Below, in pieces: positions 1,333-57,700 of a stretch of 64,000 nt of DNA. The stretch comes from Hemiscyllium ocellatum (taxonomy: Eukaryota), in assembly GCF_020745735.1 (NCBI RefSeq), contig NC_083409.1, forward strand, positions 18,310,341-18,374,340, in the 5' to 3' direction. The notes under the pieces were generated by a model that ran no database searches, was not told the DNA's origin, and worked only from the letters and a program-made list of their open reading frames with translations. The position numbers were made by a program, and so were the translations under genes. How positions within the stretch are numbered: position 1 is the first letter of the stretch; the number at the start of each line of letters is the position of its first letter.

Positions 1333-1635
1333 CTACATGCATTCTGATCTCCTGATGCTCTTGCTGAGGGGAGAGGGGAGGGTCACGTGTGTGAGGCCAG
1401 TCAGACCCAGAGAGGGTCAGCAGGCTGCTGACACTGTAGGTGCTGTCTGAAGCTCGCAGGTAGTTGCTGGTCTGAACCCCGTCCAAAATGACTGCACCGT
1501 CCTTCTTCCACTGCACCTCCAGTTCATCGGGATAGAAGTGATTGGCAAGGCACTCCAGGGTGGCAGTGCCCTTGGCATTGACCTGCTCCGGGGAGGGAGG
1601 CAGCAGGGTCAGCTTGGGCTGAGAGTTTTCGCAGC
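1333..1635 (-). pseudogene. IGKC: Ig kappa (NS4-type) constant exon of cluster 1, frameshifted
   Basis: Acceptor ttgtctttcag at 1636-1637. Reads (S)CENSQPKLTLLPPSPEQVNAKGTATLECLANHFYPDELEVQWKKDGAVILDGVQTSNYLRASDSTYSVSSLLTLSGSDW, then a frame-breaking deletion at 1396/1397. The other frame resumes LTHVTLPSPLSKSIRRSECM* (TAG at 1333-1335). The second domain Cys is missing. Confidence 0.95.
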
Positions 1636-7010: not shown

Positions 7011-7016
7011 TGATGC

Positions 7017-9924: not shown

Positions 9925-10297
9925 AGGTCAGTGAGATCAGAGACTGGGACAGGGAGTCAGAGCTCACATCAAAATCTGCCCGTGTCCATCACACTGAGAC
10001 TGGCAGGAGGTTACTCACTGATTTCACTCCATGTTGCAGGAATGGGACCACAGGCTGCAAATGGACAGAGCTCCTCCACACAGTGAGTAAAACTTACTGA
10101 CTTCTGTCTTGTTGCTTAAGCGGGGCAATGGAACGAAAGAAATACAGCTGGACACCCTGTTCGACACAGTGCTCCTCAATCAACCATTTCGTTCACTGCA
10201 GCTCCCCACTAACACCTTCAACAATTCAGTAACTGTATTTTAGAAAGTGTGTTTCAGTATTGACAGAGTTAATAATGGACAATTGAGGTTTACTTGC

Positions 10298-10332
10298 TCA
10301 GTCTGAGTTTGGTTCCTTTACCGAACGTGGAC
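10298..10332 (-). other. IGKJ: Unrearranged J-kappa segment of cluster 1
   Basis: G TCC ACG TTC GGT AAA GGA ACC AAA CTC AGA CTG A = STFGKGTKLRL with the FGxG motif. Followed by donor GCAAGT at 10297-10292 (GC instead of GT). Confidence 0.95.
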
Positions 10333-10371
10333 CACAGTGAGAGCTCCCAGTGCAGAGGCTGTATAAAAACC
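10333..10371 (-). promoter_or_regulatory. J recombination signal sequence, 23-bp spacer
   Basis: Plus-strand CACAGTG 10333-10339, 23-bp spacer 10340-10362, nonamer ATAAAAACC 10363-10371 (8/9 match). Confidence 0.95.
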
Positions 10372-10815
10372 TCTGCTCTCTGCTTCCCCCTGTCATTCTC
10401 AACCTCTCCCTGTCTCTCTCTGTCTCTGTCTATTCTTGGTCAATCTCATTCACTCCCTACCCCTCTCTGTCTCTTCCTCATTCATGTGTCTTTCTCTCTC
10501 TGTCTTCCTGGGTTGCGTCCAGCTACTCTCGGGGGTTTGTGAAATTTAGTTTTCATTGTTAAATCTTGCAGCTGTTCTTCACATGTGGCCATGGAGTGTA
10601 AGAGGGAAACTTGAGGCCTTCAGTGAGCGGTGGACACCACAGGGACTGGAGTGTGTAGTGGACAGTGACAAACGCAGCATGGGGTAATTTGTTTAATTTA
10701 CTTTATATATAACTGTGGATGTGTCAGTGCAGGAGATGGGACTATCTGTCCATTATTATACATTTCATATAACTGTTGGATGTGTCAGTACAGAAGGTGG
10801 TGTTGTGCGTGTTGA

Positions 10816-10843
10816 GGTTTTTGTATGGCACTGTATCACTGTA
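10816..10843 (-). promoter_or_regulatory. V recombination signal sequence, 12-bp spacer, heptamer mutated
   Basis: Minus-strand TACAGTG (10843-10837), 12-bp spacer, perfect ACAAAAACC (10824-10816). V12/J23 is the kappa configuration. Confidence 0.95.
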
Positions 10844-11139
10844 AAGGCTGCTGCTATACTGCTGACAGTAATAGTCAGCGACATCTTCATTCTGAACGTT
10901 GCTGATTGTCAGGGTGAAACTGGTCCCTGATCCACTGCCGGTGAATCGATTGGAGACTCCTGTGAGTCGATTTGTTGCATCATAGATCAGGAGAGCGGGT
11001 TTCTGACCTTCTCACTGCTGGTGCCAAGCCAGGTTGCTGCTAATGCTTTGACTGGTCATCCAGGTGGTGGTTGCAGTCTGGCCCAGTCCCATTAACAGCA
11101 CCGGGGGAGACTCGGTCATGATGATGTCCCCACTGATAC
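10844..11139 (-). pseudogene. IGKV: V-kappa exon of cluster 1 (pseudogene)
   Basis: [101 protein letters not shown] at 11014-11012 (CGA in paralog); first Cys is Trp. Confidence 0.95.
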
Positions 11140-11325
11140 CTGAGGGGTCAGAGAGAAACACAGTGAAGTCAGAACTGTCACAGAAAGAGCCTGTCAAATG
11201 AGAGATTGTTGGAGACACTGAGCATTCCTCTGGTTTCAGCATTTTCCCTTCAATCACAAGTCAGTGGAATTGGAGTGAAATGGAGAGCAGCTAAAGATTC
11301 AAGGTGGAAGGAGAGAGATTTGTAC

Positions 11326-11374
11326 CTGCGACACAGAATGCCAGGGGCCAGATCAGCTGGATGTGTGAAATCAT
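11326..11374 (-). pseudogene. IGKV: Leader exon of cluster 1 V (intact on its own)
   Basis: ATG at 11374-11372, MISHIQLIWPLAFCVA(G), GT donor, 186-bp phase-1 intron 11140-11325. Confidence 0.93.
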
Positions 11375-12117: not shown

Positions 12118-12381
12118 CCAGTAAACATGGGCCTCCTTCCTGCAGGAGCCTCCACTAGAGACCAGTAAACATTGGTCTCCCTCTGACTGGAGTCTCCAAA
12201 GGAGACCAGTAAACATGTACCTCTTTCGGACTGGATCGTCTAGTAAAGACCAGTAAACATGGACCTCCTTCCTGCTGGAACCTCCAACACAGACCAGTAA
12301 ACATGGATCTCCTTCTGACTGGATCCTCCAAGACAGACCAGTAAATATGGGCCTCCTAATCACTGCAACTTCCAATGGAGA
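12118..12381. repeat. 44-bp degenerate minisatellite, 6 units
   Basis: ccagtaaa(c/t)at starts at 12118, 12162, 12206, 12250, 12294 and 12338. Confidence 0.92.
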
Positions 12382-13610
12382 TGAGTAGATGGTTGAGTTT
12401 TTGAAGAAGGAAGCAAGAAGATAGGTAAAGATAGAGTAGTGCACTCTGTCTACATGGAGTTAATACAAGGTTCCCTATGGTAGACTGCTCAGTAAGATTA
12501 TATCACATAGGAGCCAGGGACAGCTCACCAATTGGATATGAAATTGTCCTGATGATAGGAGGCTGAGGCTGGTGAGAGAGGGTTGTTCTTCAGACTGGAG
12601 GCCAGTGACCAACTGTCTGTCACAAGAATCGATCATGGATCCACTGTTGTTCATCATTTATGTGAACAATTTGGATGAGAAAATAGCAGGAATGGTCAGT
12701 AAGTTTGTGGCTGATGTTAAAATTGTTGGCATAGTGGACAGGGAAGAAGGTTATCCAAGAGTGCAATGTCATCTTGATCAACTGGGCCAGTGGGTCAACA
12801 AATCCAGATGGAAATTTTAATAAATGGAAGGAGTTGCATTTTAGGAAGACAAACCAGGGCAGAAATTACACAATTAATGGTAGAGCCATGGGGAGTGTTG
12901 TTGAACAGAGAGACTGAGGGGTACAGGTACATAGTTCCTTGGAAGTGGTGTCACAGGTAGACAGGGTGGTGAAGAAGGTACTTGGCACGCCATCTTCACT
13001 GGTCAAAGCAGGGAGTACAGGAGCTGGGACATCATATTACAGCTGTACAAGGCATTGGGAAGGCCACATTTGGACACAGTACATTTCTGCTCACCCTGCT
13101 ATAGGAAGGAAGTTATGACAGTGGTTTGAATAAAAGAAAGATTAACAGGATGTTATCAAGATTGGAGGATTTGAATTACAAGATGAGGATGAATAGGCCA
13201 AGATGTTTTTCCAGGGAATGCAGGAGATTGAGGGGTGACCTTATAGAGGTTGTGGAATTAGGAAGGTCATAGATAAGGTGAATAGTCAAAGTCTTTTCCC
13301 CAGGGTAGGAGAGTCCAGTACTAGAAGGAGTAGGTTTACGTTGAGTGGGGAAAGAATTAGTAGGAAACTGAGGGGCAACATTTTCACACAGAGGTTAGTG
13401 TGTATGTGTAATGAGCTGACAGAAGAATTCGTAGAGGTGAGTACGATTACTACATTTCAAGGACATTTTTACAGGAACATGGATAGGAAGGATTAGAGAG
13501 AATTGGGCCAAACACATGCAAATGGGACTAGTTCAGTTTTGGATACTTGGTCGGCATGGATGAGTTGAGCTGAATGGCCTGATCACATGCTGTAAACCTC
13601 TATGACTCTT
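12382..13610 (+). mobile_element. CR1 LINE 3' part inserted into the 44-bp array
   Basis: DPLLFIIYVNNLDEKIAGMVSKFVADVKIVG RT motif and ctctatgactct tail. Paralog at 51790-53040. Confidence 0.85.
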
Positions 13611-13644
13611 TGGTGATATATACATGGGACACTTTCCCATAGAA

Positions 13645-13775
13645 CCAGTAAACACGGACCTCTTTCCACTGGAACCTCCAATAGACACCAATAAACAGGG
13701 ACCTCCTTCCCATTGGATGCTCCAGAAGAGACTAGTAAACATGGTCCTCCTTCCCTCAGGACTGTCCAGCACCTG
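13645..13775. repeat. 44-bp minisatellite, 3 further units
   Basis: Unit starts at 13645, 13688 and 13732. Paralog units at 53074, 53117 and 53161. Confidence 0.85.
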
Positions 13776-14974
13776 AGCTACAAATCCAACATCCTCTCCA
13801 TAATGTAGGTCTCTTATTTCAATCTCAACAACATTGTCTCTGCACTACCTCGGCCTCTTGAACACAGAAACCCCAATTCCTGCTCGTCCTGCCCCCTAAC
13901 TCTATGATTCCAATGTCCTCTCCCAGCTTCCTAAAGCCATATTCCATAAACTCCAACTTGTCTGATATGAAGTGGGCCCTTCCCTGTCTTATCCATCTGT
14001 CATTCCAGAATGACCCCTGACCTCACTGCTAGCCAATTGCCTCCATGGCCTCCCCCCTCCCTCCGTCTGTGTCCTGCTGCAGACTCACATTCCCTCCCTC
14101 CCCCTTCCATCTTCTGTCTCTGGTCTCCTGCCCATTGCTGCTTGCTCCATCCCACCATTGACAGCAGAGCATTCAGATCCATACAGCATGCTCTCTGACC
14201 TCCTGCCCTTGATCCCTCCCCCTCTGAATGGTTGTGCTATCGAATATACTGTTCAATCCCATCACTTTTGGTTCACTGTTCCCTTGCCATTGATTTGCTG
14301 AATTATTCCTCATCAGTGAATCTAGTCTGGCCTGTTCCTTGAGTTGGTTCAAGAGAGTTTCCCTTGAGAAAACACTCTTCTGTAAACTGGGTTGTCTGTT
14401 TCTCCCAGTCTTTGTGTAAAGGTGAGTCTAAGTGTGTGTAAGCTCTAAAACAGCACAGACAGAGGTCACTGGGCTGATTGTGACTGTTAGTCAAATGAGT
14501 CCAATGAGTTCCCATTTCTCCAGCCCTTCCTGTATAACCCTGCAATTATTTCCTTTTCAGCTATTTCTCCAAATGCCCTTTTGAAAGTTGCTGTTGAATC
14601 CACTTCCACTCACCTTGCAGACAGTCATTATGAACTCGCTGGATAAAAAATGTTCCTATCTTCTCTCTTGTGCTTTAGACTCTTTCTGAAATGTGTGCCC
14701 TCTGGTTACTGACCCTCCTGCCTGGAGAAACAATTTGTCCAGTATTTACTGCATCCAAACTCTCTAATTGTGAACCCCTCATTGAGTGAGACCTATTTCC
14801 AGCACAGGGGGAGAACATTCAGCCTGTCAGGTAAATGCTGTCATTTCATGGAGCAATCCAGTCAGTCCCACACCCTCCCCTACTCGACCCCCAGGGCCTT
14901 GCAGGTTTATTTCCATCAAGAGCCCATCCAATCTGCCATGCAATCACTGAGTGTCTTCACCTGTCTCACCTGAA

Positions 14975-15560
14975 TGGGCATTAATTTCCAAGACTTTGCC
15001 AATTTCTGCTAAAATCAAAGTTCTTTCTGACATTCCATATCTCTTGCCCAACAGAATGTAAGATAATCTCAAAGGGAAGACAGGATTTTGTCTCCACACG
15101 GACTGTGCGGTGGTCACTCTTACTGATACTGTCATGGACAGATACACCAGCAGCAGGCAGGTTGGTGAGGGTGATAGTGAGTATGTTTTTCCCTCTTGTT
15201 GGTTCCCTCACCACCTGCCCCAGGTCCAGTCTAGCAGCTGAATCAGGTGGACTTGACCAGCTTGCTCAGTAGTGATGCTTCTGAGCAGCTCTTGATGGTG
15301 GGCTTTGAAGTCCCTTACTCAGGGTATATCCTGCATCATTCCCTCCCTCAGTGCTCCCACCAAGTGTTGTTCAACATGGAGGAGGACTGACTGCTCAGTT
15401 GAGGTTGGAGGGGAGGGCGGTGCTATGTGGTAATCAGCAGGAGGTTTGCTTCCCCATGTTTGACCTGCTGTCATGAGGCTTCATGGATTCCATAGTTAAT
15501 GGTGAGGACTCCCAGGGCAACTCCCTTCCGACTGTACACATCACTGTGTTGCCTCCCCTG
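14975..15560 (-). mobile_element. LINE endonuclease-region fragment (CR1/L2 clade)
   Basis: VREPTRGKNILTITLTNLP..SDHRTVRVETK. Paralog at 54400-54990; a related independent copy at about 39850-41400. Confidence 0.7.
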
Positions 15561-15744
15561 CTTGGTCTATCCTGCCAGTTATAAACTGAATGAGGGAAAA
15601 ATTCTGTGCAGGTTTCACAGCTTGGAGACAGAGCTGCTGCTGGATTCTGTTTCTGATCTCCGAGTGCAGGCGTGTGTGTTTGTGAGAGAGTGACTGACAC
15701 TTTTTCCAAAACTGTGCTGCTTCTGCAAAAAATAAATCCTAGAA

Positions 15745-16015
15745 CCAGCCTCCTGTGCTGTCAGATTCCAGGGAGTGCAGATGGTTCACAGTTTTCTCCC
15801 GTCTCAGTAACAAACACCCAGCTGCTCCGAGCTCCTTCTTTCACTTCCTCTTTTTTGTGAAGTTTCAACCTTGCGATCTGACAGTCTTTGCAGTTATTTT
15901 TTACACTGGGGCTTTCTGCTTTAGTCAGAATCTCTAATAATAAGTGTCCGATCAGTGACAATCACAGCAGCTAAGAGCAGTCAGGACTGAGGAGCCAGGC
16001 TCACTGTGAAACATA
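15745..16015 (-). promoter_or_regulatory. Candidate B-cell enhancer upstream of cluster 1
   Basis: Minus-strand AAAAGAGGAAGTGAAA (EICE core 15848-15839); E-boxes CAGCTG 15819-15824 and CAGATG 15778-15783. Conserved in three paralogs. Confidence 0.55.
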
Positions 16016-16480
16016 TTGGGAAGATCAAAGCCATCCTCTTCAGATCCTGGTATAAGCTCCATCCCTCTCCCTGAGAATTGTCTGCTGCTCAATCAGACTC
16101 TTTACAAACTGGGTCTCATGTTTGAGAATGATCTAAGACCCATATCTTCCATATCACAAAGATCAGCCACTGAAAATCTCAGCCATGTTTATGGGGCTCC
16201 AAACATGACCATTCCAATGGCTGATGCACATCACAGCCACTGCCCTCCGTATCCTTCAGCTCATCCAAAATTCTGCAGCCCGTATCCAAACTTGCACCAA
16301 GTCCCGTTCCCACAACCCCTGCATCCCGTGCTTATATTGGCTCCTGGTCAAGCAACACCTCAATTTTCAAATTCTCATCCTTGTTCTCAAATCCCTCTCT
16401 GCCCTCCACTCTCCCTACCTCTGTAACCTCCTCCAAGCTGCCTCACTCCGTGTGGTCAGCAGTCTTGGATAATTGGCTCT
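16016..16480 (+). mobile_element. L2-type LINE RT C-terminal fragment
   Basis: LQLIQNSAARIQTCTK..LYWLLVKQHLNFQILILVLK. Paralogs at 38290-38790 (-) and 55440-55860 (+). Confidence 0.75.
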
Positions 16481-16689
16481 CTATTCCTTCATCCAAGTCA
16501 TTGAGAAATATTGTGAAATACTGAGGCCCCTGCACAAATCTCTGGGGACACCAACATTCACATCTTGTTCATTAGAGAGAACGCACATTATCCCTCGTCT
16601 CTGTCTCCTACCTCCAAACTAATTCCTAACCCAAGACAAATACTTTTCTATCACTGTCTTGATGATAGGAAGCAGAGGTAATATTGTCA

Positions 16690-17520
16690 GACTGTCAGAC
16701 TGGAGGCCTGTGTTGAGTGGAGTGCATCAGGGCTCAGTGCTGGCCCCATTACTGTTTGTTATTAATATTAATGATTTGGATGAGAACCTGTAAGGCATGA
16801 TTAGTAAGTTTGATGTGCAGGTCAGGTGAATTGGATATGTTAAATTGGCCATAGTCTTAGGTACATTAGTCAGATGGAAATGTGTCTAAATGGGTTACTC
16901 TTCAGAGGGTCAGTGTGGATTGGTTGGGCCGAAGACCTGTTTCCAAACTGGAGGGAATCTAATCTCTAATCTTGTACAGGATGTCAGTGATGTCGCACTT
17001 GGAATATTGTATTCAGTTTGGTCACCTTGTTATAGGAAGGATATTACTAAACCAGAAAGAGTACAGAAGAAATTTGCAAGGATGTTGCCTGGACTCAACA
17101 ATCTGAGTTATAGGAGGAAGTTAGGCAAGTTGGACTTTTTTCTTAGAGCGTAGGAGACTGGTGGGGGAACTTTTAGAAGTGTATAAGATCATGAGAGACA
17201 TGGATAGGGTTGGGGAAACGAGGATGAGAGGGCATCAGTTTAGTGTTAGAGAGGAATGAATAAAAGGGAACCTGAGGGGCAACATTTTTACACAGAGGGT
17301 GGCAAGCATGTGGAATGAGATGCCAGCTGAAGTGATTGAGGTGGATACATTAACAACATTTAAAAGACATTTGGACAAATACATAGATAGGAAAACATTT
17401 GAAGGATATGGGCCAAGTGCAGGGAAATGGGGTTAGCGTGGATGGACATTTTGGTCAGCACGGTCCAGTTTGGGCCAAAGGGCCTGTCTCTGTGCTGTAG
17501 GACTCGATGGCTCTAAGACT
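16690..17520 (+). mobile_element. CR1 LINE 3' fragment with SINE piece
   Basis: WSPCYRKDITKPERVQKKFARMLPGL. Paralog at 56090-56950. Confidence 0.8.
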
Positions 17521-17559
17521 CTATAATTCCATATGTTTCCATGTTCATGAACAAACATA

Positions 17560-18840
17560 GAAACAAAGGAACTAGGAGCAAGAGGAAGCCATTCAGCCCT
17601 TCGAGTTAGCTCTGCCATTCAATATGACCATGGCTTTTCATCCAACTTAGTCCCCTGCTCCCATTTTTTCTCCATAAAATTTAACCTCTTTAGTCCTAAG
17701 AATATACTTATTCTCTCTTGAAAATATTGAATGTTTTAGGCTCAACTGCTTTCTGTGACAGAATATTCCACGAGCTTCCCAGTCTCTGGCTAAAGAAATG
17801 TCTCCTCAGCTCAGTCTGAAATAACATTTCCCTTTTCTTTAAACCATAATTCGTAGTTCTGGATTCCCCAGTCATCAGGAACATCCTCCCTGTGTTGCTC
17901 TAGTCTTGTCCTGTTCGGATTTTCAAGGTTACAATTTGATTCCTTTCAATCTTCTAAGCGCCAATGAATATAATCCTAACTGATCCAGTTTCTCATCAGA
18001 TCTAAGTGCTGTCATCCCAGGAATCAGTCTGGTAAACCTTTCCTTCCTTCCCTCCACGGCCAGAACATCCTTCCTCAGATAAGGAGCGCGAAACTACCCA
18101 CGACAGAATCATAAAATCACACAGTACAGAGGAGGCCCTTCAGCCCATTAACTGTGTACCAGCCAAACTACACTAAACCTATACCAGTCCCACTTTCCAA
18201 CATAAGGCCCACAGCTTGAATGTTATAACATTTCAACTGCTCACCCAAGTACATTTTAAAGTTTGTGAGGTTTCCCACCTCAACCCCACTCCCAGGCTTT
18301 GCATTCCAGATGCACACCAGCCTCTGGATGAAAAACATTTTCCTCAAAACATCTTCAAACCTCCTATCTTTCACATTGAATATGAGCCAACTTGTTATTG
18401 ACCCTCCCACGAATGAGAACAGCTGCTTTCTATCCACCCTGTCCATTCCCCTCATAACCTTATACACCTCTATCAGGTCCCCCCTCCACCTTCTCTGCTC
18501 TGAAGAAAACAACCCGAGCTGATCGAATTTCTCTTCATCACTGAAAAGCTCCATCCCACACAACATCCTGGTGATTCCCCTCTGCACCCCAACCAGTGCA
18601 ATCACCTCCTTCCTACAGTGTGGTGACCTGAACTGCACACAGTACTCCAACTGTGGCCTAACCAATGTTCTACTTAACTGCAACATATCCTCCTGCTTTT
18701 ATAACCACTAGCTGAAATGACAAAGGCAAGTGTCCCCTCTGCCTTTATAACTGCTCCGTTAACCTGTCTTGCCATATTCAGCGATCAGTGGAGAAGCACC
18801 CCAAGATCACGCTGTTCCTTAGAGCTTCCTCAGTTCAAAG
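17560..18840 (-). mobile_element. CR1 LINE 3' fragments
   Basis: RTLVRPQLEYCVQFRSPHCRKEVIALVGVQRGITRML..RGDLIEVYKVMRG. Paralog at 57000-58260. Confidence 0.85.
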
Positions 18841-18844
18841 AACG

Positions 18845-21800
18845 AAGAACAATGAAAATTACAGCACAAGAACTGGCCCTTCGGCCCTACTAGCCTGCAC
18901 TGGTCCATACCTCATCTAAATCTGTCATCAATTTTCCAAGGGTCTATCTCCCTTTGCTCCCTGCCCATCCATGTATCTATCTAGATATATCTTAAATGAT
19001 GCTATTGTGCCTGCCTCTACCACCTCCACTGGCAACGTGTTCCAGGACCAATCACTCTCTGTGTGAAGAACTTTCCATACATATCTCCTTTAAATGTTTC
19101 CACTCTCACTTTGAACTCATGACCCCGAGTAATTGAGTCCCTCACTCTGGGAAAAAGTTTCTTGCTATCCACCCTGTCTACACCTCTCATGATTTTGTAG
19201 ACGTCAATCAGGTCCCCCCTCAATGTTCGACTTTCTAATGAAAATAATCCTATACTACTCAACCTCTCTTCATAGCTCGTGCCCTCCATACCAGGCAATC
19301 TTGGTGAACCTCCTCTGCACCCTCTCCAAAGCATCTACATCCTTCTGGCTGTGTGGCGACCAGAACTGTGGGCAGTATTCCAAATCTGGCCAAGCTAAAG
19401 TCCGATATAATTCTAACATGACCTGCCAACTCTTGTACTGAATACCACGTTTGATGAAGGAAGGTATGCCATATGCCTTCTTGACCACTCTATCGATCTG
19501 TATTGCCACCTCCAGGGTGCAATGGACCTGAACACCCAGGTCTCTCTGGCCATCAATTTTCCCAGGGTGTTCCATTCACCGTACAGTTTACTCCAGATTT
19601 GGATTTTCCAAAATTCATCAGATCACATTTCACCGGATTGAACTCCATCCATCCGTTTCTCTGCCCAACTCTCCAATCTGTCTATATTCTGCTACATTCT
19701 CTGTCAGTCCCCTTCACTATCTGCTACTCCACCAATCTTAGCGTCATCTGCAAACTTGTTAATCAGATCACCTATACCTACCTCCAGATCATTTATGTAT
19801 ATCAAAAACAAGAGCGGTACCAGCACGGATTCCTGTTCTCCATTCTGAAAAACTCCTTCCACTACTACTGTCTGTCTTCTGTTGCCCAGCCTGTTCTCTA
19901 TCCATCTAGTGAGTACACTCTGGACCCCATGCGACTTTAATTTCTCCATCAGGCTGCCATGGGGAACTTTATCAAACACCTTACTGAAGTCCATGTGTAT
20001 GACATCCACAGCCCTTCCCTCCTCAATCAACTTTATCACTTCTTCAAAAACGTCTATAAAGTTGGTAAGACATGACATTCCCTGCACAAAATCATGCTGC
20101 CTGTTACTGAAATTTCTTCCAAATGTAAATAGATCTTATCCCTCAGTATCTTCTCCAGCAGCTTCTCTACCACTACATCAGGCTCACTGGTTGATAGTTA
20201 CCTGGATTATCCTGGCTACCCTTCTTAAACATGAGCAATTCTCCAGTCCTCTGGGACCTCATCCATGTTCAAGGTTGCTACAAAGATATCGATTAAGGAC
20301 TCAATTATTTCCTCTCTTGCTTCCCTCAGTAAGCTGGGATCGATCCCATCCCGACCTGGGGACTTGTGCACCTTGATGCCTTTTAAAATACCCAACACTT
20401 CCTCCTTCCTTAAACCGACTTGACCCTGAGTAATCAAACACCTATCCCCAACTTCAACATCTGTCATTTCCCTCTCCTTGGTGAATACCAACGTAAAGCA
20501 CTCATTAAGAATTTCATCCATTTTCTCTGACTCCACACATAACATTCCTCCTTTGTCCTTGAGTGGGCCAACCCTTTCTCTAGTCACCCACTTGCTCCTA
20601 ATATAACAATAAAAGGATTTGGAATTTTCCTTAATCCTGTTTGCTAATGATATTTCATGACCCTTTTTAGCCCTTCTAATTCCTCATTTCAGATCGGTCC
20701 AACTTTCCCAATATTCTTCCAAAGCTTTGTCTGTTTTCAACAACCGAAACCTGATGTATGCATCCTTTTTCCTCTTAGCTAGTCTCAAAATTTCATCTGT
20801 CATCCAGCGTTCCCTAATTCTGCCATTTCAATCCTTATTTTCACAGGGACATGTCTGTCCTGACTCTAGTCAACCTCTCTTTAAAAGCCTCCCACATATC
20901 AAATGTGGATTTCCCTTTAAACAGCTACTCCCAATCCACATTCCCCAGCTCCTGCCAAATTTTGGGATAGTTGGCCTTCCTCCACTTTAGCCCTCTTCCT
21001 TTAGAACCAATCTCATCTTTGTCCATGAGCATTCTAAAACTTATGGAATCGTGATCACTCTTCCCAAAGTAATCCCTGACTGAGATTTCAACCACCTGAC
21101 CGGGCTCATTCCCCAATACCAGGTCCAGTATGGCCCCTTCCTGAGTTAGACTATTTCCACATTACTCTGTAAAATCCTCCTGAATGCTCATTACAAATTC
21201 TGCTCCATCTTAACTGCTAACATGAAGTGAATCCCAGTCAATGTTGGGAAAATTAAAATCTTCCATCACCACCACCTTGTTACTCCTACATCTTTCCATA
21301 ATCTGTTTACATATTTGTACCTCTATCCCACGTTCACTGTTAGGAGGCTTGTAGGATAGCACCAACATTGTTACTGCACCCTTCCTGTTTCTGAGCTCTG
21401 CCCATATTGCCCCACTGCTCGAGTCCTCCATAGTGCCCTCCTTCAGCACACCTGTAATATCCACTCTTACCTGTAATGCAACTCCTCCATCCCTTTTACC
21501 TCCCTCTCAAACCCATCTGATACATCTGTATCCTGGGATATTTAGTTGCCAATCTTGCCCTTCCCTCAACCACGTCTCAGTAATAGCAATAACATCATAC
21601 TCCCAGATACTAGTCCAAGCCCTAAATTCCTCTGCCTTACCTACTACACTTCTCACATTAAAACAAATTCACCTCAGACCATCTGTCCCTTTGCGTTCAT
21701 CATCTGCTCCCTACCTACTCTTAACCTTAGTCACGCTGACTTCAATATCTAATTCCTGACAGGCTTTAGTTACTCCCTCCTTATTGCCCACTAACCTCCT

Positions 21801-22290
21801 CATTTGGTTCCTATCCCTCTGATACACTATTTTGAACCCTCCCCAAGAGTGTGATCAAACACATCCCACAGGACACTGGTTCCAGTCCTGCCCAGGTGTA
21901 GACGGCTCGATTTGTAATTGTCCTACCTCCCCAGGAACCAGTCCCAATGTCCCAAAAATCTGAACCCCTCCCTCCTGCACCATCTCTCAAGCCATGCATT
22001 CATCCTGCCTATACTTTCATTTCGACTCTGACTAGCACATGGCACTGGGAGCAATCCTGAGATTACTACCTCTGAGATCCTACATGGTTCCTAACTCCCT
22101 AAATTCTGCTTGTAGGGCCTCATTCCATTTATTACCGATATCATCCGTGTCTGCATGAACCGTCACAGCTAGCTGTTCACCTCCCCCTTCAGAATGTCCT
22201 GCAGCCGATCTGAGACATCCCTGACCCGTACAACTGGGAGGCAACATGCTATTCGTGAGTCTTGTTTTTGACCACAGAACCGCCGATCTA
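18845..22290 (-). mobile_element. Near full-length degenerate CR1 LINE (ORF1 esterase, endonuclease, RT)
   Basis: VTVHADTDDIG (ORF1), WAELRNRKG..EDFNFPNIDWD (EN), DFSKVFDKVPHG..YINDLE..FADDAKIG (RT). Paralog at 58280-61720. Confidence 0.9.
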
Positions 22291-24730: not shown

Positions 24731-24734
24731 ACTT

Positions 24735-37750: not shown

Positions 37751-38789
37751 TGTAATTTTAAATTTCCTGTTGGTCTTTATTTTTTAATCTGTAAAATATT
37801 TCCGTCAAGGAGACAGAGAAGGCTCCAGCACAGGAAGAGGCTGTTCAGCCCGTCGTATCAGTGCTGGCTGTTTATTAACCTCATTCACAATGAACATCTC
37901 CATTCAATGTTTGTTGTCAGGAATTGATTGAATCTGTTTTTAGAGACAGGATGACTAACAAATGACTAACTAACATGAACTACTCCAAGAGAGTCAGCAT
38001 GGATTTATAAAGGTTCAGACATCTTTAACTAACCTGGTTACACTTTGTTAGGAGCACACTAGTGTGGGATATAAGGGAATGTCGATGGCTATTGTCTAAA
38101 GGGAATTCCACAAGACATTTAAAAAGAGACATGGAATCAGATGGAATTTGAGAAATGCATTTACCTTGGGTCAGGAATGGGTCTGGAGCTAGGAGACAGA
38201 GAGGAGGGATAATGTGCATGTCCTCCAATGAGCAAGATGTGAATAGTGGTGTCCCCAGGGATCTGTGCTGGGACGTCAGCTTCACACAATATTTCTCAAT
38301 GACTTGGATGAAGAAATAGAGAACCATATATCCAAGATTGTTGATCACTCTGAGTGAGGTGGTTTGGAGGGTGAGATAGGGAGGGTGGAAGGACAGGGAG
38401 AGGTTTGAGAACAAGGATGAGAACTTGCAAATCAAGACATTTCTGGACTGGGAGCCAATGTAGGTCAGTGAGCACAAGGGGAGGGAATGGGGGAATGGGG
38501 CTTGGTGGGAGTTCGGATACTCGCAGCAGAGTTTGGGATGAGCTGATGTTTACCGAAGGTGATGGCTGTGATGTGGGCCAGGACAACAGTGGAATGGTCA
38601 TGCTTGGAGTCCCTATCACATAGCTGAGATTTTCAGTGTCTGATCTTTGTGATGTGGAGGATGTGGGGCTCAGATCAGCCTCAAAGATGAATCTAAGGTC
38701 GTAAACAGTCTGGTTAAGCAGCAGACAGTTCTCAGGGAGAGGGATGCAGTTTGTATTGGGAGCTGAAGAGGATGGCTTTGATCTTCCCA

Positions 38790-39045
38790 ATGTGTTTCCC
38801 AGTGAGCCTGACTCCTCAGTCCTGACTGCTCTTAGCTGCTGTGATTGTCACTGATTAGACACTTATTATTAGAGATTCTGACCACAGCAGAAAGCCCCAG
38901 TGTAAAAAATAACTGCAAAGACTGTCAGATCACAAGGTTGAAACTTCACCAAGAGAGGAAGTGAAAGAAGGAGTTCAGAGCAGCTGGACCTTTGTTACTG
39001 AGAAAACTGTGAACCATCTGCATTCCCTGGAATCTGACGGCACAA
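38790..39045 (+). promoter_or_regulatory. Candidate B-cell enhancer upstream of cluster 2
   Basis: RUNX ACCACA 38881-38886, EICE GGAAGTGAAA 38957-38966, E-boxes CAGCTG 38981-38986 and CATCTG 39015-39020. Confidence 0.55.
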
Positions 39046-42000
39046 GAGGAGGCCATTCAGCCCATTGTGTCTGTGAGTGACCAAAGTAGTCCTACTGCTC
39101 CTCTCTCTCCCCATAATCCAGCAAACCTTTCCTTTCCAGCTCGATCTTAATGCTCTCTTGTCGACCTGGGTAGACAGCACAGGATTGCCCCTAATCTGCG
39201 TTCCAAATTGGCATCTCATTCATTCATTGGGAGACAAGCTGCCAGGGCTGGGAAATGGAGCTCAGGATCCTGAATATTCCCTCTCCCCTCCTGAGGGACC
39301 CTTCATTCGGTTTTGCATATTCATTCGTGGGAAGTGGGCTTCACCGGCTGGCCCAGCATTTTCTACCCTGTCCCTAGTTACCCTGGAGAAGGTGGTGGGA
39401 AGCTGCCTTCTTGAATCGCTATAGTCCACAAGCTGTAAGTTGACCCACAATGCTCTTCGGGAGGGAATGCCAGCATTTTAACCCAGCAAGGCTGAGGGAT
39501 TAGCAACATATTTCCAAGTCAGGATGCTAAGCTTTTCCGAGGGGAAATTGCAGCTCATAGTGTTCCCATGTGTCTGCAGCTCCTGGTCTTCGAAACAGAA
39601 GTGGATGTGGGTTTGGAAGGAAACCAAAAGAAATGCGGATGCTGTAAATCCGAGACAAAGATCTAAATTGCTGGAAAAGCTCGGCAGGTCTGGCAACATC
39701 TGTGAAGAGAGATGCACAGGTCAAGCACGAAACATTAACTCTGATTTCTCTCCCCAGATGCTGCCAGACTTGCTGAGCTTTTCCAGCGATTTCTATGTTT
39801 GTCCATGGGTTTGGAAGGTGCTATCTGAGGACCTTTGGTGAGTTTCTGCAGTGCATCTTATCGATAATACTCACTGCTGCTACTGAGCATCGGGAATGGT
39901 GAGAGTGGATGCTTTGAGAATGTGATGCCAATCAAGCAGGTTGCTTGGCTCTGGATGGTATCAAACTTTTCGATTGGATGAGAAAGACATAGACACGAAT
40001 AGATTAGAGGGATACGGGCCAAATGCAGGCAAATGAGACTCGTTCACTTCAGAAACCCTGGTCAGCATGGAGAAGATTGGCTTCAAGGCTTGTTTCTTCG
40101 CCGTATGACTCTGTGACACTATCAGTCTATGAATGTTGTTGGAGCTGCACCTGTCCAGGCAAGTGGGGAGTATTTGCTCACACTCCTGACTTGGTTGACA
40201 GGCTTTCGGGGAATCAGGAGGTGAGTTACTCAATACAGTATTTCTAGCCTCTAACCTGCTCTTGTAACCAATGAGCTTCTGTGGTGAGTCCAGTTGTGTT
40301 TCTGGTCAATGGCACCTCAAGAATGCTGATAGTGGGGATTCAGTGATGGTAATAGCATTGACTGTCAAGGGACGATGGTTAGGATGTCTCTTATTGCTGA
40401 TGGTCATTGGCTGGCATTTGCATGGCACCAATGGAAAATATCACTTCTCAGACAAAACCTGGATGTTGTCCAAATATTGTTGTATTTGAACATGGACTAT
40501 TTCAGTATCTGTGGAGTTGAGAATGGTGCTGAACATTGCCAAAGATTGCACAATCATCCCCATTTACGAGTTTGCATTGAGTTGCAATATTTGTTTGGAG
40601 TCTGTCCTATTTAGTACGGTGATAGTACCACACAACACAATGGAGGGGATTCTCAATGTGAAGGTCAGATTTTGTTTCCACAAGGACTGTGTGATGGTCA
40701 CTCTTATCAATACTGTCAAGGATAGATGCATCTACAGCCACAAGATTGGTGAGGATGGGGTCAAGCATCTTTTTCCATCTTTTTGGTTCCAGCTGCAGAG
40801 CCAGTCCCTCAGCTACATCCATGAGGAACCAACCAGATCGATCAGGAATGCTGCTGCCGAGCCACTCTCAGTGGTGGACATTGAAACCCCCCACCCAGAG
40901 TACACTCTCTGCTGTCATCACCCTCAGTGCTTCCTCCAAATGTTGTTCAACATCCAGGAGAGACTGATTCATCAGCCGAGGGAGCAAGATACCTTGTAAT
41001 CACCAGAAGGTTTCCTCGCCCATGTTTAACCTGGTGTCATGAGGTCCAGAGCCAACTTTGAGATTTTCCAGGGTAACTCCCTCCTGGCTGTAGACCACTG
41101 TGTCATCAGCTCTGCTGGGTCTGCCTTTCTGGTGGGACAGGACACATGCAGGGACAGTGATGGCGGTGTCTGGGGCATTGTCTGTAAGGTATGATTCTGT
41201 GAGTATGACTGTGTCAGGCTGTTGCTTGACTAGTCTGTAAGACAGCTCTCCTGAATTTGGCACTAGCTCCCAGATGTCAGGAAGGAGGATGGAGCAGGGT
41301 AGACAGGACTGTTTCTGTCATTGTCTTTTCAGAGTCTAGATCGGTGCCTGCGGTCTGTCCGGTCTCATTTCTTTGTTGAAATATTGTCATAATTGATACA
41401 ACTGAGAGCCCTGCTCGGCCATTTCAGAGGGCAGTTAAGGGTCAACCACATTGCTGGGGTACAGTTCCATGGACCCTGTAGTACATTCTGTCCTCTCCCA
41501 CTTCCCCATTCTTAATGTGGAAGGCTGGAGGTTGCTAGTAGGATATTCAACTGCAGGAGCTATCACAGCCCCCTGCACAATTCTGTCCCCACATTAAATC
41601 CACACAAATCTTGAAGTCACATAGCACCTGCAATGTTCAAAATGGTCCAAGATGGTTCACAAAGTTGCAGTAAGAGGAATGGGGGAGGGGGTGGAGGAAC
41701 ATAAGAACTAGGAGCAGGAGCAGGCAATTCAGCTCCACAATCCCACTCCACCATTTAATACAATCATGGCTGATCCCACCTCAGACTCAACTCCACTTTC
41801 CTGCCCACTCTCCATCATCCTTTAACCCATTACCCATTAAATATCTGTCCATCTCCTCCCTGATGTGAGACAGGGAAGGGACCACTCCATTCAGAAAAGA
41901 ATGACTATGGAAGGGGAAGGGATTGGAACATGTTGTGAATGGACAGGATGGGTCAGTGGGTCAGAGCCTGTCCTGTCCCTCCAACTCACGCTGATGGCCT

Positions 42001-43976: not shown

Positions 43977-44025
43977 ATGATTTCACACATCCAGCTGATC
44001 TGGCCCCTGGCATTCTGTATCGCAG
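43977..44025 (+). CDS. IGKV: Ig kappa leader exon, cluster 2
   Basis: MISHIQLIWPLAFCIA(G), GT at 44026, 186-bp intron ending AG at 44210-44211. Confidence 0.95.
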
Positions 44026-44211
44026 GTACAAATCTCTCTCCTTCCACCTTGAATCTTTAGCTGCTCTCCATTTCACTCCAATTCCACTGACTTGTGATTG
44101 AAGGGAAAATGCTGAAACCAGAGGAATGCTCAGTGTCTCCAACAATCTCTCATTTGACCGGCTCTTTCTGTGACAGTTCTGACTTCACTGTGTTTCTCTC
44201 TGACCCCTCAG

Positions 44212-44541
44212 GTATCAGTGGGGACATCATCATGAGCCAGTCTCCCCCGGTGCTGTCAGTGGGACTGGACCAGACCGCAACACTCACCTGTACGGCCAGT
44301 CAATCTGTTAGCAAGTGGGTTGACTGGTTCCAGCAGCGAGAAGGTCAGAAACCCTCTCTCCTGATCTATGATGCAACAACTCGATTCACAGGAGTCTCCG
44401 AGCGATTCACCGGCAGTCGATCAGGGACCAGTTACACCCTGACAATCAGCAACGTTCAGAATGAAGATGTCGCTGACTATTACTGTATGCAGCGTAACAG
44501 CTGGCCTTTCACGTTCGGTAAAGGAACCAAGCTCAGACTGA
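44212..44541 (+). CDS. IGKV: Pre-joined in-frame V-J kappa exon, cluster 2
   Basis: [110 protein letters not shown]. Both Cys and the Trp are intact, there is no RSS, and the donor is GTAAGT at 44542. Confidence 0.97.
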
Positions 44542-44752
44542 GTAAGTAAACCTCAATCTTCCTTTTTAACCCTGTCAATACTGAAACACACTTTCTAAGA
44601 TACAGTTACTGATTTGTTGAAGGTGTTAGTGGGGAGCTACAGTGAATGAAATGGTTGATTGAGGAGCACTGTATCTAACAGGGTGTTCAGTTCTATTTCT
44701 TTTGTTCCATTGCTCCCTTTAAAAAATAAGATATAAGGCAGTAAGTTTTAGA

Positions 44753-51747: not shown

Positions 51748-51760
51748 NNNNNNNNNNNNN
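51748..51760. other. Assembly gap (13 N)
   Basis: Read directly. Confidence 1.
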
Positions 51761-54700: not shown

Positions 54701-57700
54701 CTTCTGAGCAGCTCTTGATGGTGGGCTTTGAAGTCCCTTACTCAGGGTATATCCTGCATCATTCCCTCCCTCAGTGCTCCCACCAAGTGTTGTTCAACAT
54801 GGAGGAGGACTGACTGCTCAGTTGAGGTTGGAGCGGAGGGCGGTGCTATGTGGTAATCAGCAGGAGGTTTCCTTCCCCATGTTTGACCTGCTGTCATGAG
54901 GCTTCATGGGTTCCATAGTTAATGGTGAGGACTCCAGGGCAACTCCTTTCTGACTGTACACACCACTGTGTTGCCTCCCCTGCTTGGTCTATCCTGCCAG
55001 TTATAACTGAATGAGGGATCAATTCTGTGCAGGTTTCACAGCTTGGAGACAGAGCTGCTGCTGGATTCTGTTTCTGATCTCCGAGTGCAGGCGTGTGTGT
55101 TTGTGAGAGAGAGTGACTGACACCTTTTCCAAAACTGTGCTGTTTCTGCAAAAAATAAATCCTAGAACCAGCCTCCTGTGCTGTCAGATTCCAGGGAGTG
55201 AAGATGGTTCACAGTTTTCTCCCGTCTCAGTAACAAACACCCAGCTGCTCCGAGCTCCTTCTTTCACTTCCTCTTTTTTGTGAAGTTTCAACCTTGCGAT
55301 CTGACAGTCTTTGCAGTTATTTTTTACACTGGGGCTTTCTGCTGTGGTCAGAATCTCTAATAATAAGTGTCCGATCAGTGACAATCACAGCAGCTAAGAG
55401 CAGTCAGGAACTGAGGAGCCAAGCTCATTGTGAAACATATTGGGAAGATCAAAGCCATCCTCTTCAGATCCTGGTATAAACTCCATCCCTCTCCCTGAGC
55501 ACTATCTGCTGCTCAACCAGACTCTTTACAAACTGGGTCTCATGTTTGAGAATGATCTAAGCCCCATATCTTTCATATCACAAAGATCAGCCACTGAAAA
55601 TCTCAGCCATGTTTATGGGGCTCCAAACATGACCATTCCAATGGCTGATGCACATCACAGCCACTGCCCTCCGTATCCTTCAGCTCATCCAAAATTCTGC
55701 AGCCCGTATCCAAACTTGCACCAAGTCCCGTTCCCACAACCCCCTGCACCCCGTGCCTATATTGGCTCCTGGTCGAGCAACACCTCGATTTTCAAATTCT
55801 CATCCTTGTTCTCAAATCCCTCTCTGCCCTCCACTCTCCCTATCTCTGTAACCTCCTCCAAGCTGCCTCACTCCGTGTGGTCAGCAATCTTGGATAATTG
55901 GCTCTCTATTCCTTCATCCAAGTCATTGAGAAATATTGTGAAATACTGAGGCCCTGCACAAATCCCTGGGGACACCACTATTCACATCTTGTTCATTAGA
56001 GAGCACGCACATTATCCCTCTTCTCTGTCTCCTACCTCCAAACTAATTCCTCACCAAAGACAAATACTTTTCTGTCACTGTCTTGATGATAGGAAGCAGA
56101 GGTAATATTGGAAGGATGCTTGTCAGACTGGAGGCCTGTGTTGAGTGGAGTGCCTCAGGGCTCAGTGCTGGCCCCATTACTGTTTGTTATCAATATTAAT
56201 GGTTTGGATGAGAACCTGTAAGGCATGATTAGTAAGTTTGATGTGCAGGTCAGGTGAATTGGACATGTTAAATTGGCCATAGTCTTAGGTACATTAGTCA
56301 GAGGGAAATGTCTCTAAATGGGTTACTCTTCAGAGGGTCAGTGTGGATTGGTTGGGCCGAAGACCTGTTTCCACACTGGAGGGAATCGAATCTCTAATCC
56401 TGTACAGGATGTCAGTGAGGTCGTACTTGGAATATTGTATTCAGTTTGGTCACCTTGTTATAGGAAGGATATTACTAAACCAGAAAGAGTACAGAAGAAA
56501 TTGGCAAGGATGTTGCCTGGACTCAACAATCTGAGTTATAGGGAGAGGTTAGGCAAGTTGGACTTTTTTCTTCGAGCGTAGGAGACTGGTGGGGGAACTT
56601 TTAGAAGTGTATAAGATCATGAGAGACATGGACAGGGTTGGGGAATCGAGGATGAGAGGGCATCAGTTTAGTGTTAGAGAGGAATGAATAAAAGGGAACC
56701 TGAGGGGCAACATTTTTACACAGAGGGTGGCACGCATGTGGAATGAGATGCCAGCTGAAGTGATTGAGGTGGATACATTAACAACATTTAAAAGACATTT
56801 GGACAAATACATAGATAGGAAAACATTTGAAGGATATGGGCCAAGTGCAGGGAAATGGGGTTAGCATGGATGGATATTTTGGTCAGCACGGTCCAGTTTG
56901 GCCAAAGGGCCTGTCTCTGTGCTGTAGGACTCGATCACTCTAGACTCTATAATTCCATATGTTTCCATGTTTCTGAACAGTCTCTCAAACATAGAAACAA
57001 AGGAACTAGGAGCAAGAGGAGGCCATTCAGCCCTTCAAGTTGGCTCTGCCATTCAATATGACCATGGCTAATCATCCAACTTAGTCCCCTGCTCCCATTT
57101 TTTCTCCATAAAATTTAACCCCTTTAGTTCTAAGAATACACTTATCCTCTCTTGAAAATATTGAATGTTTTGGGCTCAACTGCTTTCTGTGACAGACTAT
57201 CCCACTAGCTTCCCAGTCTCTGGCAAAAGAAATGTCTCCTCAGCTCAGTCTGAAATAACCTTTCCCTTTTCTTTAAACCATAATTCGTAGTTCTGGATTC
57301 CCCAGTCATCAGGAACATCCTCCCTGTGTTGTTCTAGTCTTGTCCTGTTCGGATTTTCAAGGTTACAATATGATTCCTTTCAATCTTCTAAGTGCCAATG
57401 AATATAATCCTAACTGATCCAGTTTCTCATCAGATCTAAGTGCTGTCCTCCCAGGAATCAGTCTGGTAAACCTTCACTGCTCTCCCTCCACAGCCAGAAC
57501 ATCCTTCCTCAATTAAGGAGCCTGAAACTACCCACGACAGAATCATGAAATCACACAGTACAGAGGAGGCCCTTCAGCCCATTAACTGTGTACCAGCCAA
57601 ACTACACTAAACCTACACCAGTCCCACTTTCCAACATGAGGCCCACAGCTTGAATGTTATGACATTTCAACTGCTCACCCAAGTACATTTTAAACTTTGT

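What the first reader, a model, noticed from the sequence alone, without database searches (positions are those of the whole stretch)
15745..16015. PU.1/IRF composite element plus E-boxes and RUNX conserved 4.5-5 kb upstream of all three clusters
Seen: (AA)GAGGAAGTGAAAG at 15839-15848(-), 38957-38966(+) and 55262-55271(-), always in the same orientation relative to its V. A CAGCTG lies about 15 bp away in all three, CAGATG in two, and RUNX TGTGGT in two. Between clusters 1 and 2 the block (15745-16650 versus 39045-38155) survives as an island while the DNA between it and the promoter is unrelated. Known: GGAAnnGAAA EICE with E2A sites is the core of the mammalian kappa 3' and lambda enhancers. 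Inference: a per-cluster shark light-chain enhancer placed 5' of V rather than 3' of C. I am not aware of a description of it.
Basis: partly seen in the sequence, partly recalled or inferred. Interest (0 to 1): 0.75.

Follow-up and report, generated by a model that had tools for sequence, protein, structure and literature searches.

The report
Candidate upstream enhancer, shark kappa clusters
A 340-base non-coding block a few kilobases upstream of shark antibody kappa light-chain genes carries the same PU.1/IRF site as a mouse light-chain enhancer and changes about half as fast as its flanks, so it is a credible but untested candidate on-switch for these genes.

Summary
The motif observation holds. 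GAGGAAGTGAAAG occurs exactly three times (0.17 expected), each with CAGCTG 13 nt away. Two caveats apply.

- **Not three independent copies.** Copies 1 and 3 lie in one 10.6-kb duplication (94.5% identical). The V gene of "cluster 3" is not assembled, because the duplicate starts right after an N gap.
- **Cluster 1 is a pseudogene.**

The informative unit is a 341-bp core (38709-39049 = 16097-15749 = 55521-55172) between TE-derived flanks. I found it four more times: twice in one Chiloscyllium punctatum locus, once in another, and once in Stegostoma tigrinum. Wherever the V is assembled, the core lies 2.5-6.5 kb 5' of a kappa V and in V orientation.

- **Motif retention.** The EICE is intact in 6 of 7 copies, CAGCTG in 7 of 7 at fixed spacing, and RUNX in 5 of 7. 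CAGATG is not conserved.
- **Rate.** The core diverges at about half the rate of its flanks, including across species, but not in the oldest lineage.
- **Limit.** A 14-nt invariant run is not unusual given the core's overall conservation (P = 0.26).

Enhancer function is plausible but unmeasured. No paper describing such an element was found. The scan has noted this same element at other kappa clusters of this genome at least eight times.

The parts
15749..16097 (-). Core copy 1 (349 bp), 4.4-4.7 kb upstream of the leader ATG of pseudogene cluster 1
   Evidence: 8.2% mismatch to copy 2 against 18-21% in the adjoining left flank. No other copies in about 190 kb.
15838..15850 (-). PU.1/IRF composite (EICE) GAGGAAGTGAAAG, copy 1
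   Evidence: Exact match.
15819..15824 (.). E-box CAGCTG, 13 nt from the EICE, copy 1
   Evidence: Spacing identical in all 7 copies.
15919..15924 (+). Position of the RUNX site, mutated in copy 1 (TTTAGT instead of TGTGGT)
   Evidence: Alignments; motif table.
38709..39049 (+). Core copy 2 (341 bp), 4.9-5.3 kb upstream of the leader ATG of the intact germline-joined VJ cluster 2
38955..38967 (+). EICE, copy 2
38981..38986 (.). E-box CAGCTG, copy 2
38881..38886 (-). RUNX site TGTGGT (read on the minus strand), copy 2; kept in 5 of 7 copies
38905..38920 (+). 16-nt stretch invariant in 6 copies (AAAAATAACTGCAAAG), holding a Myb-type TAACTG
   Evidence: The factor assignment is by eye only.
55172..55521 (-). 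Core copy 3, a recent duplicate of copy 1 (97% identical in the core); its V is not assembled
55261..55273 (-). EICE, copy 3
16098..16649 (-). Left flank of the ancestral block, TE-derived; used as the neutral yardstick
   Evidence: Weak 60-69% hits at several other places in the window and loci. 18-21% mismatch between copies 1 and 2. Absent in Stegostoma.
39050..39310 (+). Right flank, probably TE-derived; shared with L002, L003 and L001a but replaced in copies 1 and 3
10293..11374 (-). Cluster 1 leader (11374-11324), V (11143-10850, in-frame stop, first Cys lost) and J (10328-10293)
   Evidence: tblastn.
1336..1630 (-). Cluster 1 C exon, frame-shifted, with about 9 codons missing including the second Cys
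43977..44546 (+). Cluster 2 leader (43977-44027) and germline-joined VJ exon (44208-44546), open frame, Pfam V-set
51748..51760 (.). Assembly gap hiding the C exon of cluster 2 and the V of the cluster that owns core copy 3
   Evidence: Homology to cluster 1 runs into the gap from both sides.

Best explanation
The 341-bp core is a cis-regulatory module belonging to each kappa light-chain mini-locus, most likely a B-lineage transcriptional enhancer. In this reading a SPI-class ETS factor (PU.1 or SpiB) binds AGAGGAAGTG and recruits IRF4 or IRF8 to the abutting GAAA. An E2A-type bHLH factor binds the CAGCTG 13 nt away, and a RUNX factor binds TGTGGT 70 nt upstream. Together they would activate the V promoter 2.5-6.5 kb downstream.

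Shown: sequence, position, orientation, recurrence across clusters and in two further species' assemblies (C. punctatum and S. tigrinum), and a roughly 2-fold slower substitution rate than the flanks.

Inferred: factor binding, B-cell specificity and any enhancer activity.
For: - The exact EICE occurs 3 times in the window against 0.17 expected. Only 6 GGAANNGAAA sites exist in 64 kb, and EICE + CAGCTG + RUNX within 340 bp occurs only at the cores.
- Seven copies were found in about 190 kb. None is detectably elsewhere, and every copy with an assembled V lies 5' of it in V orientation: 4.46 and 5.01 kb in the window, 4.8 kb in L001a, 6.5 kb in L002 and 2.46 kb in Stegostoma L003.
- The DNA on both sides has been replaced independently. 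The left flank is missing in Stegostoma and the right flank is replaced in copies 1 and 3, yet the core persists.
- Core against flank mismatch rates: 8.2 vs 18.3% (c2/c1, p 2e-5); 6.5 vs 17.6 and 14.6% (c2/L002); 9.5 vs 16.2% (c2/Stegostoma, p 0.02); 8.1 vs 15.4% (L002/Stegostoma, p 0.0075). The effect is not due to CpG sites.
- In each comparison the core is about as conserved as the promoter + leader + V block.
- The EICE is kept in 6 of 7 copies, CAGCTG in 7 of 7 with no indel between them, and RUNX in 5 of 7.
- GGAAGTGAAA equals the lambdaB site of the mouse Ig lambda2-4 enhancer (PMC4872103).
- A PU.1 family exists in cartilaginous fish (Anderson et al. 2001, cited in PMC5192425).
- The germline-joined cluster 2 needs no recombination yet keeps the full motif set.
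Against:
- Shuffling the alignment columns gives an invariant run of 14 nt or more in 26% of trials. With all 7 copies the EICE window ranks only 27th of 329, so the motif is not shown to be more constrained than the rest of the core.
- The core-versus-flank contrast vanishes against the older L001 lineage (ratio 0.85-0.93, not significant). It is also alignment-sensitive for Stegostoma (not significant, p 0.02).
- L001b has 3 of 13 EICE positions changed.
- Pseudogene cluster 1 still keeps the EICE.
- L004 shows no core within 14 kb upstream, though it has N gaps.
- The comparisons share branches and are few in number.
- Motif matching was done after the fact.
Confidence: 0.5

Rival explanations
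1. The core is non-functional paralogous DNA that travelled with each cluster duplication. It looks conserved because it is a lower-mutability stretch, or one homogenised by gene conversion, between faster-decaying TE fragments. The EICE would then be a chance survivor.
For: - A 14-nt invariant run is expected in 26% of column shuffles.
- There is no rate difference against the L001 lineage.
- L001b decays at the background rate, including in the EICE.
- Pseudogene cluster 1 keeps the element.
- The neighbouring leader intron is also near-invariant among clusters (the first 36 residues of the read-through are identical to C. punctatum P0001), which shows homogenisation operates here.
Against: - A roughly 2-fold lower rate is also seen between species (Stegostoma against the window and against L002), where within-genome conversion cannot act.
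- The effect persists outside CpG sites.
- The core survives independent replacement of both flanks.
- The a priori chance that a 340-bp block upstream of an Ig L-chain gene carries a full SPI-class site fused to an IRF half-site identical to lambdaB, plus an E2A box, is low.
Confidence: 0.2
2. The core is functional but is not a classical transcriptional enhancer. It could be a promoter for upstream germline (sterile) transcripts that open the cluster for recombination, a targeting element for somatic hypermutation, or a boundary between head-to-head clusters.
For: - Orientation relative to V is fixed in every copy whose V is assembled, which is unusual for a pure enhancer.
- Clusters occur head-to-head with cores facing away from each other, both in the window and in L001.
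- From my own knowledge, unchecked here: the motif set (ETS/IRF, E-box, RUNX/Myb-like) is the one reported for hypermutation-targeting parts of bird and mammalian Ig enhancers.
Against: - No CTCF-type consensus is present.
- No annotated upstream exon maps to the core.
- There is no Rfam match.
- Germline-joined cluster 2 needs no recombination yet keeps the element.
- Fixed orientation is also simply what duplication of whole clusters produces.
Confidence: 0.2
3. The core is part of a low-copy transposable element that happened to be captured upstream of an ancestral kappa cluster, with or without later co-option.
For: Both flanks are TE-derived (weak extra hits), and the region is densely packed with repeats.
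Against: In about 190 kb from the window's genome and two further species' assemblies (C. punctatum, S. tigrinum) the core has only the seven kappa-linked copies and no weaker relatives, whereas true repeat families in the same DNA have 5-10 copies each. Genome-wide counting was not possible.
Confidence: 0.07

Closest known systems
Mouse Ig lambda2-4 / lambda3-1 enhancers (lambdaB PU.1-IRF4 site)
   Same: The 10-mer GGAAGTGAAA is identical to the lambdaB core (AATAAAAGGAAGTGAAACC, PMC4872103). Both have a purine/A-rich 5' flank, and both are linked to a small V-J-C light-chain unit.
   Different: The mouse elements lie 3' of C, whereas this one is 2.5-6.5 kb 5' of V. The MEF2 site that partners lambdaB in mouse (own knowledge) has a consensus match in only 4 closely related shark copies. 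There is no sequence homology beyond the motif, and no activity data for the shark element.
Mouse Ig kappa 3' enhancer core (PU.1/Pip-IRF4 composite plus E2A sites)
   Same: The grammar is the same: an ETS-IRF composite with 2-nt spacing and a nearby E2A-type E-box. It also serves a kappa-type light chain. (Established knowledge: Pongubala 1992, Eisenbeis 1995; not re-read here.)
   Different: It is located downstream of C-kappa and serves one large translocon locus, not one element per mini-cluster. The spacer and flanks differ (GGAACTGAAA in mouse, from memory).
Chicken Ig lambda enhancer / hypermutation-targeting (DIVAC) elements
   Different: The chicken element lies downstream of C-lambda, and its role in targeting AID has been shown experimentally. 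Nothing comparable has been tested in sharks.
Teleost cluster-type IgL enhancers (Atlantic cod, Bengten et al. 2000, from memory; not found in the held library)
   Same: A cluster-type V-J-C organisation in which each cluster is thought to carry its own enhancer.
   Different: As I recall, these were mapped 3' of C, between clusters. No sequence relation was tested.

Membership tests
Ig light-chain B-cell enhancer built on an ETS-IRF composite element | Canonical EICE, GGAA-NN-GAAA, with a SPI-class 5' flank | tested here: met
   AGAGGAAGTGAAAG is exact in 6 of 7 copies and identical to the mouse lambdaB 10-mer.
Ig light-chain B-cell enhancer built on an ETS-IRF composite element | E2A-type E-box close to the composite site | tested here: met
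CAGCTG lies 13 nt away in 7 of 7 copies with no indel.
Ig light-chain B-cell enhancer built on an ETS-IRF composite element | Physical linkage to an Ig light-chain transcription unit | tested here: met
   It lies 2.46-6.5 kb 5' of the leader ATG in 5 copies. The V genes of the other two copies (c3, L001b) lie outside the assembled or fetched DNA.
Ig light-chain B-cell enhancer built on an ETS-IRF composite element | Purifying selection relative to neighbouring non-coding DNA | tested here: inconclusive
   The core evolves at 0.37-0.59 of the flank rate in four comparisons (p 0.02 to 1e-6). The ratio is 0.85-0.93 (not significant) against L001a. The result is alignment-sensitive for Stegostoma, and a motif-level excess is not shown.
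Ig light-chain B-cell enhancer built on an ETS-IRF composite element | Position downstream of J (intronic or 3' of C), as in all described mammalian and bird light-chain enhancers | tested here: not met
   The core is 5' of V in every copy with an assembled V. Clusters 1 and 2 are head-to-head, so the cores cannot be 3' elements of a neighbour.
Ig light-chain B-cell enhancer built on an ETS-IRF composite element | Binding of PU.1/SpiB with IRF4/8, and B-cell-specific enhancer activity or open chromatin | not testable with these tools
No chromatin or reporter data are available.
Interspersed repeat (transposable element) | Many dispersed copies unlinked to one gene family | tested here: not met
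   Only the 7 kappa-linked copies were found in about 190 kb, even at relaxed BLAST settings, whereas the flanks do show weak dispersed hits. The genome-wide count was not testable.
Structured non-coding RNA gene | Match to a described RNA family | tested here: not met
   No Rfam hit at gathering threshold in the whole window.

The most novel reading that the evidence does not exclude
The core is the autonomous switch of each shark kappa mini-locus. It would be an EICE/E-box/RUNX enhancer inherited from the common ancestor of kappa and lambda enhancers of jawed vertebrates, placed 5' of V. Stochastic activation of one core by limiting PU.1/IRF/E2A would select which of the many clusters a B cell expresses, and the same element would recruit hypermutation to that cluster.
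Probability: 0.15. Interest if true: 0.8.

Novelty: new member of a known kind. Interest (0 to 1): 0.55.

Why it matters
I found no published transcriptional enhancer for any cartilaginous-fish antibody gene in the held library. The 2016 review 'Fish Immunoglobulins' does not use the words enhancer, promoter or regulatory element at all. Sharks carry their antibody genes as many small independent clusters, and how a B cell turns on only a few of them is an open question (PMC2435157 proposes limiting trans-factors and promoter-enhancer complexes). A defined 340-bp element with a testable PU.1/IRF site gives that question a concrete handle. If active, it would show that the ETS-IRF plus E2A logic of light-chain enhancers predates the split of sharks and bony vertebrates.

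Tried and rejected
- **Chromosome-scale assemblies.** No DNA was returned for C. punctatum GCA_047496795.1, Hemiscyllium ocellatum, Cetorhinus maximus or Scyliorhinus torazame. No species outside Orectolobiformes could be examined.
- **Short or gapped loci.** L005 and L006 have only 2.1-2.7 kb upstream and no core. L004 shows no core, but it has N gaps.
- **Findings search.** The search of earlier findings by sequence gave nothing.
- **Coding exon.** Rejected: no annotated N-terminal extension of shark kappa models maps to the core.
- **Known RNA.** Rejected.
- **3' enhancer of a neighbouring cluster.** Rejected, because clusters 1 and 2 are head-to-head.
- **Concerted evolution only.** I first read the data this way because MAFFT global alignment gave no core/flank contrast for Stegostoma. 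An affine-gap realignment restored a 0.59 ratio, so I dropped that as the main reading and kept it as a caveat.
- **Other motifs.** The CAGATG, CCAAT, TCF-like and MEF2-consensus matches are not conserved across lineages. No consensus kappaB, octamer, EBF or CTCF site is present.
- **3' EICE.** An EICE next to CACGTG at 313, about 1 kb 3' of C1, lies outside the conserved 3' flank (homology ends at 583).

Full report
**What is in the window**

The window holds shark kappa-type light-chain clusters. Its V and C are closest to Chiloscyllium and Hemiscyllium proteins.

- **Cluster 1** lies on the minus strand: leader 11374-11324, V 11143-10850, J 10328-10293 and C 1630-1336. It is a pseudogene. 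The V has an in-frame stop and has lost its first cysteine. The C exon is frame-shifted, with about nine codons missing.
- **Cluster 2** lies on the plus strand: leader 43977-44027 and an open, germline-joined VJ exon at 44208-44546 (Pfam V-set). Its C exon should lie about 8.7 kb downstream, but the sequence runs into an N gap at 51748-51760.
- **The third copy.** Directly after the gap, 51761-62346 is a 94.5% copy of 12342-22918, the region upstream of cluster 1. No third V exists in the window.
- **Arrangement.** Clusters 1 and 2 are head-to-head.

**The observation**

GAGGAAGTGAAAG is exact at 15838-15850(-), 38955-38967(+) and 55261-55273(-), against 0.17 matches expected.

- CAGCTG sits 13 nt away in all three copies.
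- CAGATG is in copies 1 and 2.
- TGTGGT is in copies 2 and 3.
- Only six GGAANNGAAA sites occur in the 64 kb.
- The triple EICE + CAGCTG + RUNX within 340 bp occurs only at these blocks.

Copies 1 and 3 belong to one recent duplication, and the V of copy 3 is unassembled. Distances to the leader ATG are 4.46 kb (cluster 1) and 5.01 kb (cluster 2).

**Delimiting the element**

The 0.9-kb block shared by clusters 1 and 2 is not uniform. Sliding identity is 0.86-0.96 over 16050-15750 and 0.65-0.86 over 16650-16050.

I compared it with loci fetched around kappa genes of other assemblies:

- L001 and L002 come from C. punctatum GCA_003427335.1.
- L003 comes from Stegostoma tigrinum CM060516.1.

The common unit is a 341-bp core, 38709-39049, equal to 16097-15749 and 55521-55172.

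- The left flank has weak dispersed relatives, so it is TE-derived, and it is absent in Stegostoma.
- The right flank is shared by copy 2, L002, L003 and L001a but replaced in copies 1 and 3.
- At relaxed BLAST settings the core has only its seven copies in about 190 kb.

**Position and orientation**

| Copy | Position of the core |
|---|---|
| Cluster 1 | 4.46 kb 5' of the leader ATG |
| Cluster 2 | 5.01 kb 5' of the leader ATG |
| L001a | 4.8 kb 5' of the gene start |
| L002 | 6.5 kb 5' of the gene start |
| L003 (Stegostoma) | 2.46 kb 5' of the gene start |
| L001b | inverted, 3.3 kb from L001a, consistent with another head-to-head pair |

All copies with an assembled V are in V orientation. 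L004 shows no core within 14 kb upstream of its divergent V, but it has N gaps. L005 and L006 are too short upstream.

**Is it constrained?**

Mismatch rates from affine-gap alignment:

| Comparison | Core | Flank | Ratio | P |
|---|---|---|---|---|
| c2 vs c1 | 8.2% | 18.3% (left) | 0.45 | 2e-5 |
| c2 vs L002 | 6.5% | 17.6% (left) | 0.37 | 1e-6 |
| c2 vs L002 | 6.5% | 14.6% (right) | 0.45 | 0.0014 |
| c2 vs Stegostoma | 9.5% | 16.2% (right) | 0.59 | 0.02 |
| L002 vs Stegostoma | 8.1% | 15.4% (right) | 0.53 | 0.0075 |
| c2 vs L001a | 21.1% | 22.5% (right) | 0.93 | n.s. |
| Stegostoma vs L001a | 21.5% | 25.2% (right) | 0.85 | n.s. |

- The contrast is not a CpG effect.
- It is alignment-sensitive. 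MAFFT global alignment gave no significant contrast for Stegostoma and a marginal one for L001a.
- In every comparison the core is about as conserved as the promoter + leader + V block and better conserved than most intron and intergenic blocks. The exception is a J-proximal intron block, which is 89% identical to Stegostoma.

**Motif level**

- EICE: 6 of 7 copies. L001b has 3 of 13 positions changed.
- CAGCTG: 7 of 7, with an invariant 13-nt spacer.
- RUNX: 5 of 7, lost in pseudogene copy 1 and in L001b.
- Myb-type TAACTG: 6 of 7.
- A non-consensus kappaB-like GGGGCTTTCT: 5 of 7.
- CAGATG, CCAAT, TCF-like and MEF2-consensus matches are not conserved across lineages.
- No consensus kappaB, octamer, EBF or CTCF site is present.

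Among six copies the longest invariant runs are 16, 16, 14 (the EICE) and 12 nt. One of the two 16-nt runs (starting at 38991) spans columns skipped where copy 2 has a 7-nt deletion, so it is artificially merged. Shuffling the columns gives a run of 14 or more in 26% of trials. With all seven copies the EICE window ranks 27th of 329. The EICE is therefore among the best-kept footprints, but my sample cannot show that it is more constrained than the rest of the core.

**Other readings tested**

- No Rfam family matches.
- No annotated upstream exon of any shark kappa model maps to the core.
- It cannot be a neighbour's 3' element, because the clusters are head-to-head.
- Chromosome-scale assemblies of more distant sharks returned no DNA.

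**Comparison with what is known**

- The 10-mer GGAAGTGAAA is the same as in the lambdaB PU.1 site of the mouse Ig lambda2-4 enhancer (PMC4872103 Table 1).
- The ETS-IRF composite plus E2A-box grammar is that of the mammalian kappa 3' and lambda enhancers (established knowledge).
- A PU.1 family exists in a skate (Anderson et al. 2001, cited in PMC5192425).
- The position differs: 5' of V, one per mini-cluster.
- Library searches found no description of a shark Ig enhancer. The 2016 review of fish immunoglobulins never uses the word.
- PMC2435157 invokes an undefined promoter-enhancer complex to explain limited cluster activation.

**Earlier notes of this scan**

The same element has been flagged at other kappa clusters of this genome at least eight times. 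Four of these notes have follow-ups that reached the same "credible but untested" verdict. These are unchecked AI notes. They agree with my result and suggest that the element is general to the clusters, which I could not count myself.

**Verdict**

This is a real, kappa-linked conserved non-coding module. It is most likely a B-lineage enhancer (about 0.5). Non-functional hitch-hiking DNA (0.2), another cis-function (0.2) and a TE fragment (0.07) remain as rivals. It would be a new member of a known kind of element in a lineage where none has been described. Interest is moderate to high for comparative immunology, tempered by the lack of any functional evidence and by the weaker-than-claimed independence of the three copies.

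Noticed in passing
window 10850-11143(-) and 1336-1630(-): Cluster 1 is a pseudogene. The V has an in-frame stop in FR2 and Trp in place of the first Cys. The C exon is frame-shifted with about 9 codons missing, including the second Cys. Its upstream core still has an intact EICE but a mutated RUNX site.
   Followed up: yes
window 51748-51760: A 13-N scaffold gap is flanked on both sides by homology that runs straight into it. The C exon of cluster 2 and the whole V-J of the cluster owning core copy 3 are missing from the assembly.
   Followed up: yes
window 45056-45521 (and 10082-9600 in cluster 1): A non-coding block 0.5-1 kb downstream of J is the best-conserved block against Stegostoma (89%; 84% to L002, 83% to L004). 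It could be a second, intronic regulatory element. Its motif content was not examined.
   Followed up: no
window 307-328(+): A second EICE (GGAAGAGAAA) directly abuts a CACGTG E-box about 1 kb 3' of the C exon of cluster 1. It lies outside the 3' flank conserved with L001, L003 and L004 (homology ends at 583), so it is probably chance.
   Followed up: partly
window 1-10000, 18000-28000, 44000-52000, 58000-64000: GC skew is strong and sustained (|skew| 0.2-0.43 over many kb). In both cluster bodies the sense strand of the J-C intron is C-rich and G-poor. The same skew appears in 18-28 kb, where no gene was found. Unexplained.
   Followed up: no
L001:991-1346(-) and L001:4955-5298(+): Two cores sit in inverted orientation only 3.3 kb apart in C. 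punctatum, implying a tight head-to-head cluster pair. The minus-strand copy has a decayed EICE and RUNX site and an 8-nt insertion. Its V lies outside the fetched locus.
   Followed up: partly
L004:1-14295: A C. punctatum kappa cluster with a divergent V (60% to the query) shows no core within 14 kb upstream. An 884-N gap (3286-4169) leaves open whether it is truly absent.
   Followed up: partly
window 1-232: This stretch resembles DNA found 1.7-1.9 kb upstream of V in L002, L006 and L004 (77-81%), although here it lies 3' of the C exon of cluster 1. It may be a repeat or the edge of another cluster.
   Followed up: no
window 34020-34329, 37012-37198, 37555-37747, 44742-45056, 47312-47570, 47991-48291 and others: A roughly 300-bp interspersed repeat family has many copies in both orientations, including one inserted immediately after the J of cluster 2. 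A second family of about 1.2 kb (for example 12465-13612, 8090-9211, 25218-26400, 45910-47123) has 8 or more copies.
   Followed up: no
window 44109-44207 / 11242-11144: The leader intron, read through in frame, is 100% identical at protein level over 36 residues to the N-terminus of NCBI models of C. punctatum kappa chains (P0001, P0002). Those models probably start inside the intron, and the intron is unusually invariant among clusters.
   Followed up: partly
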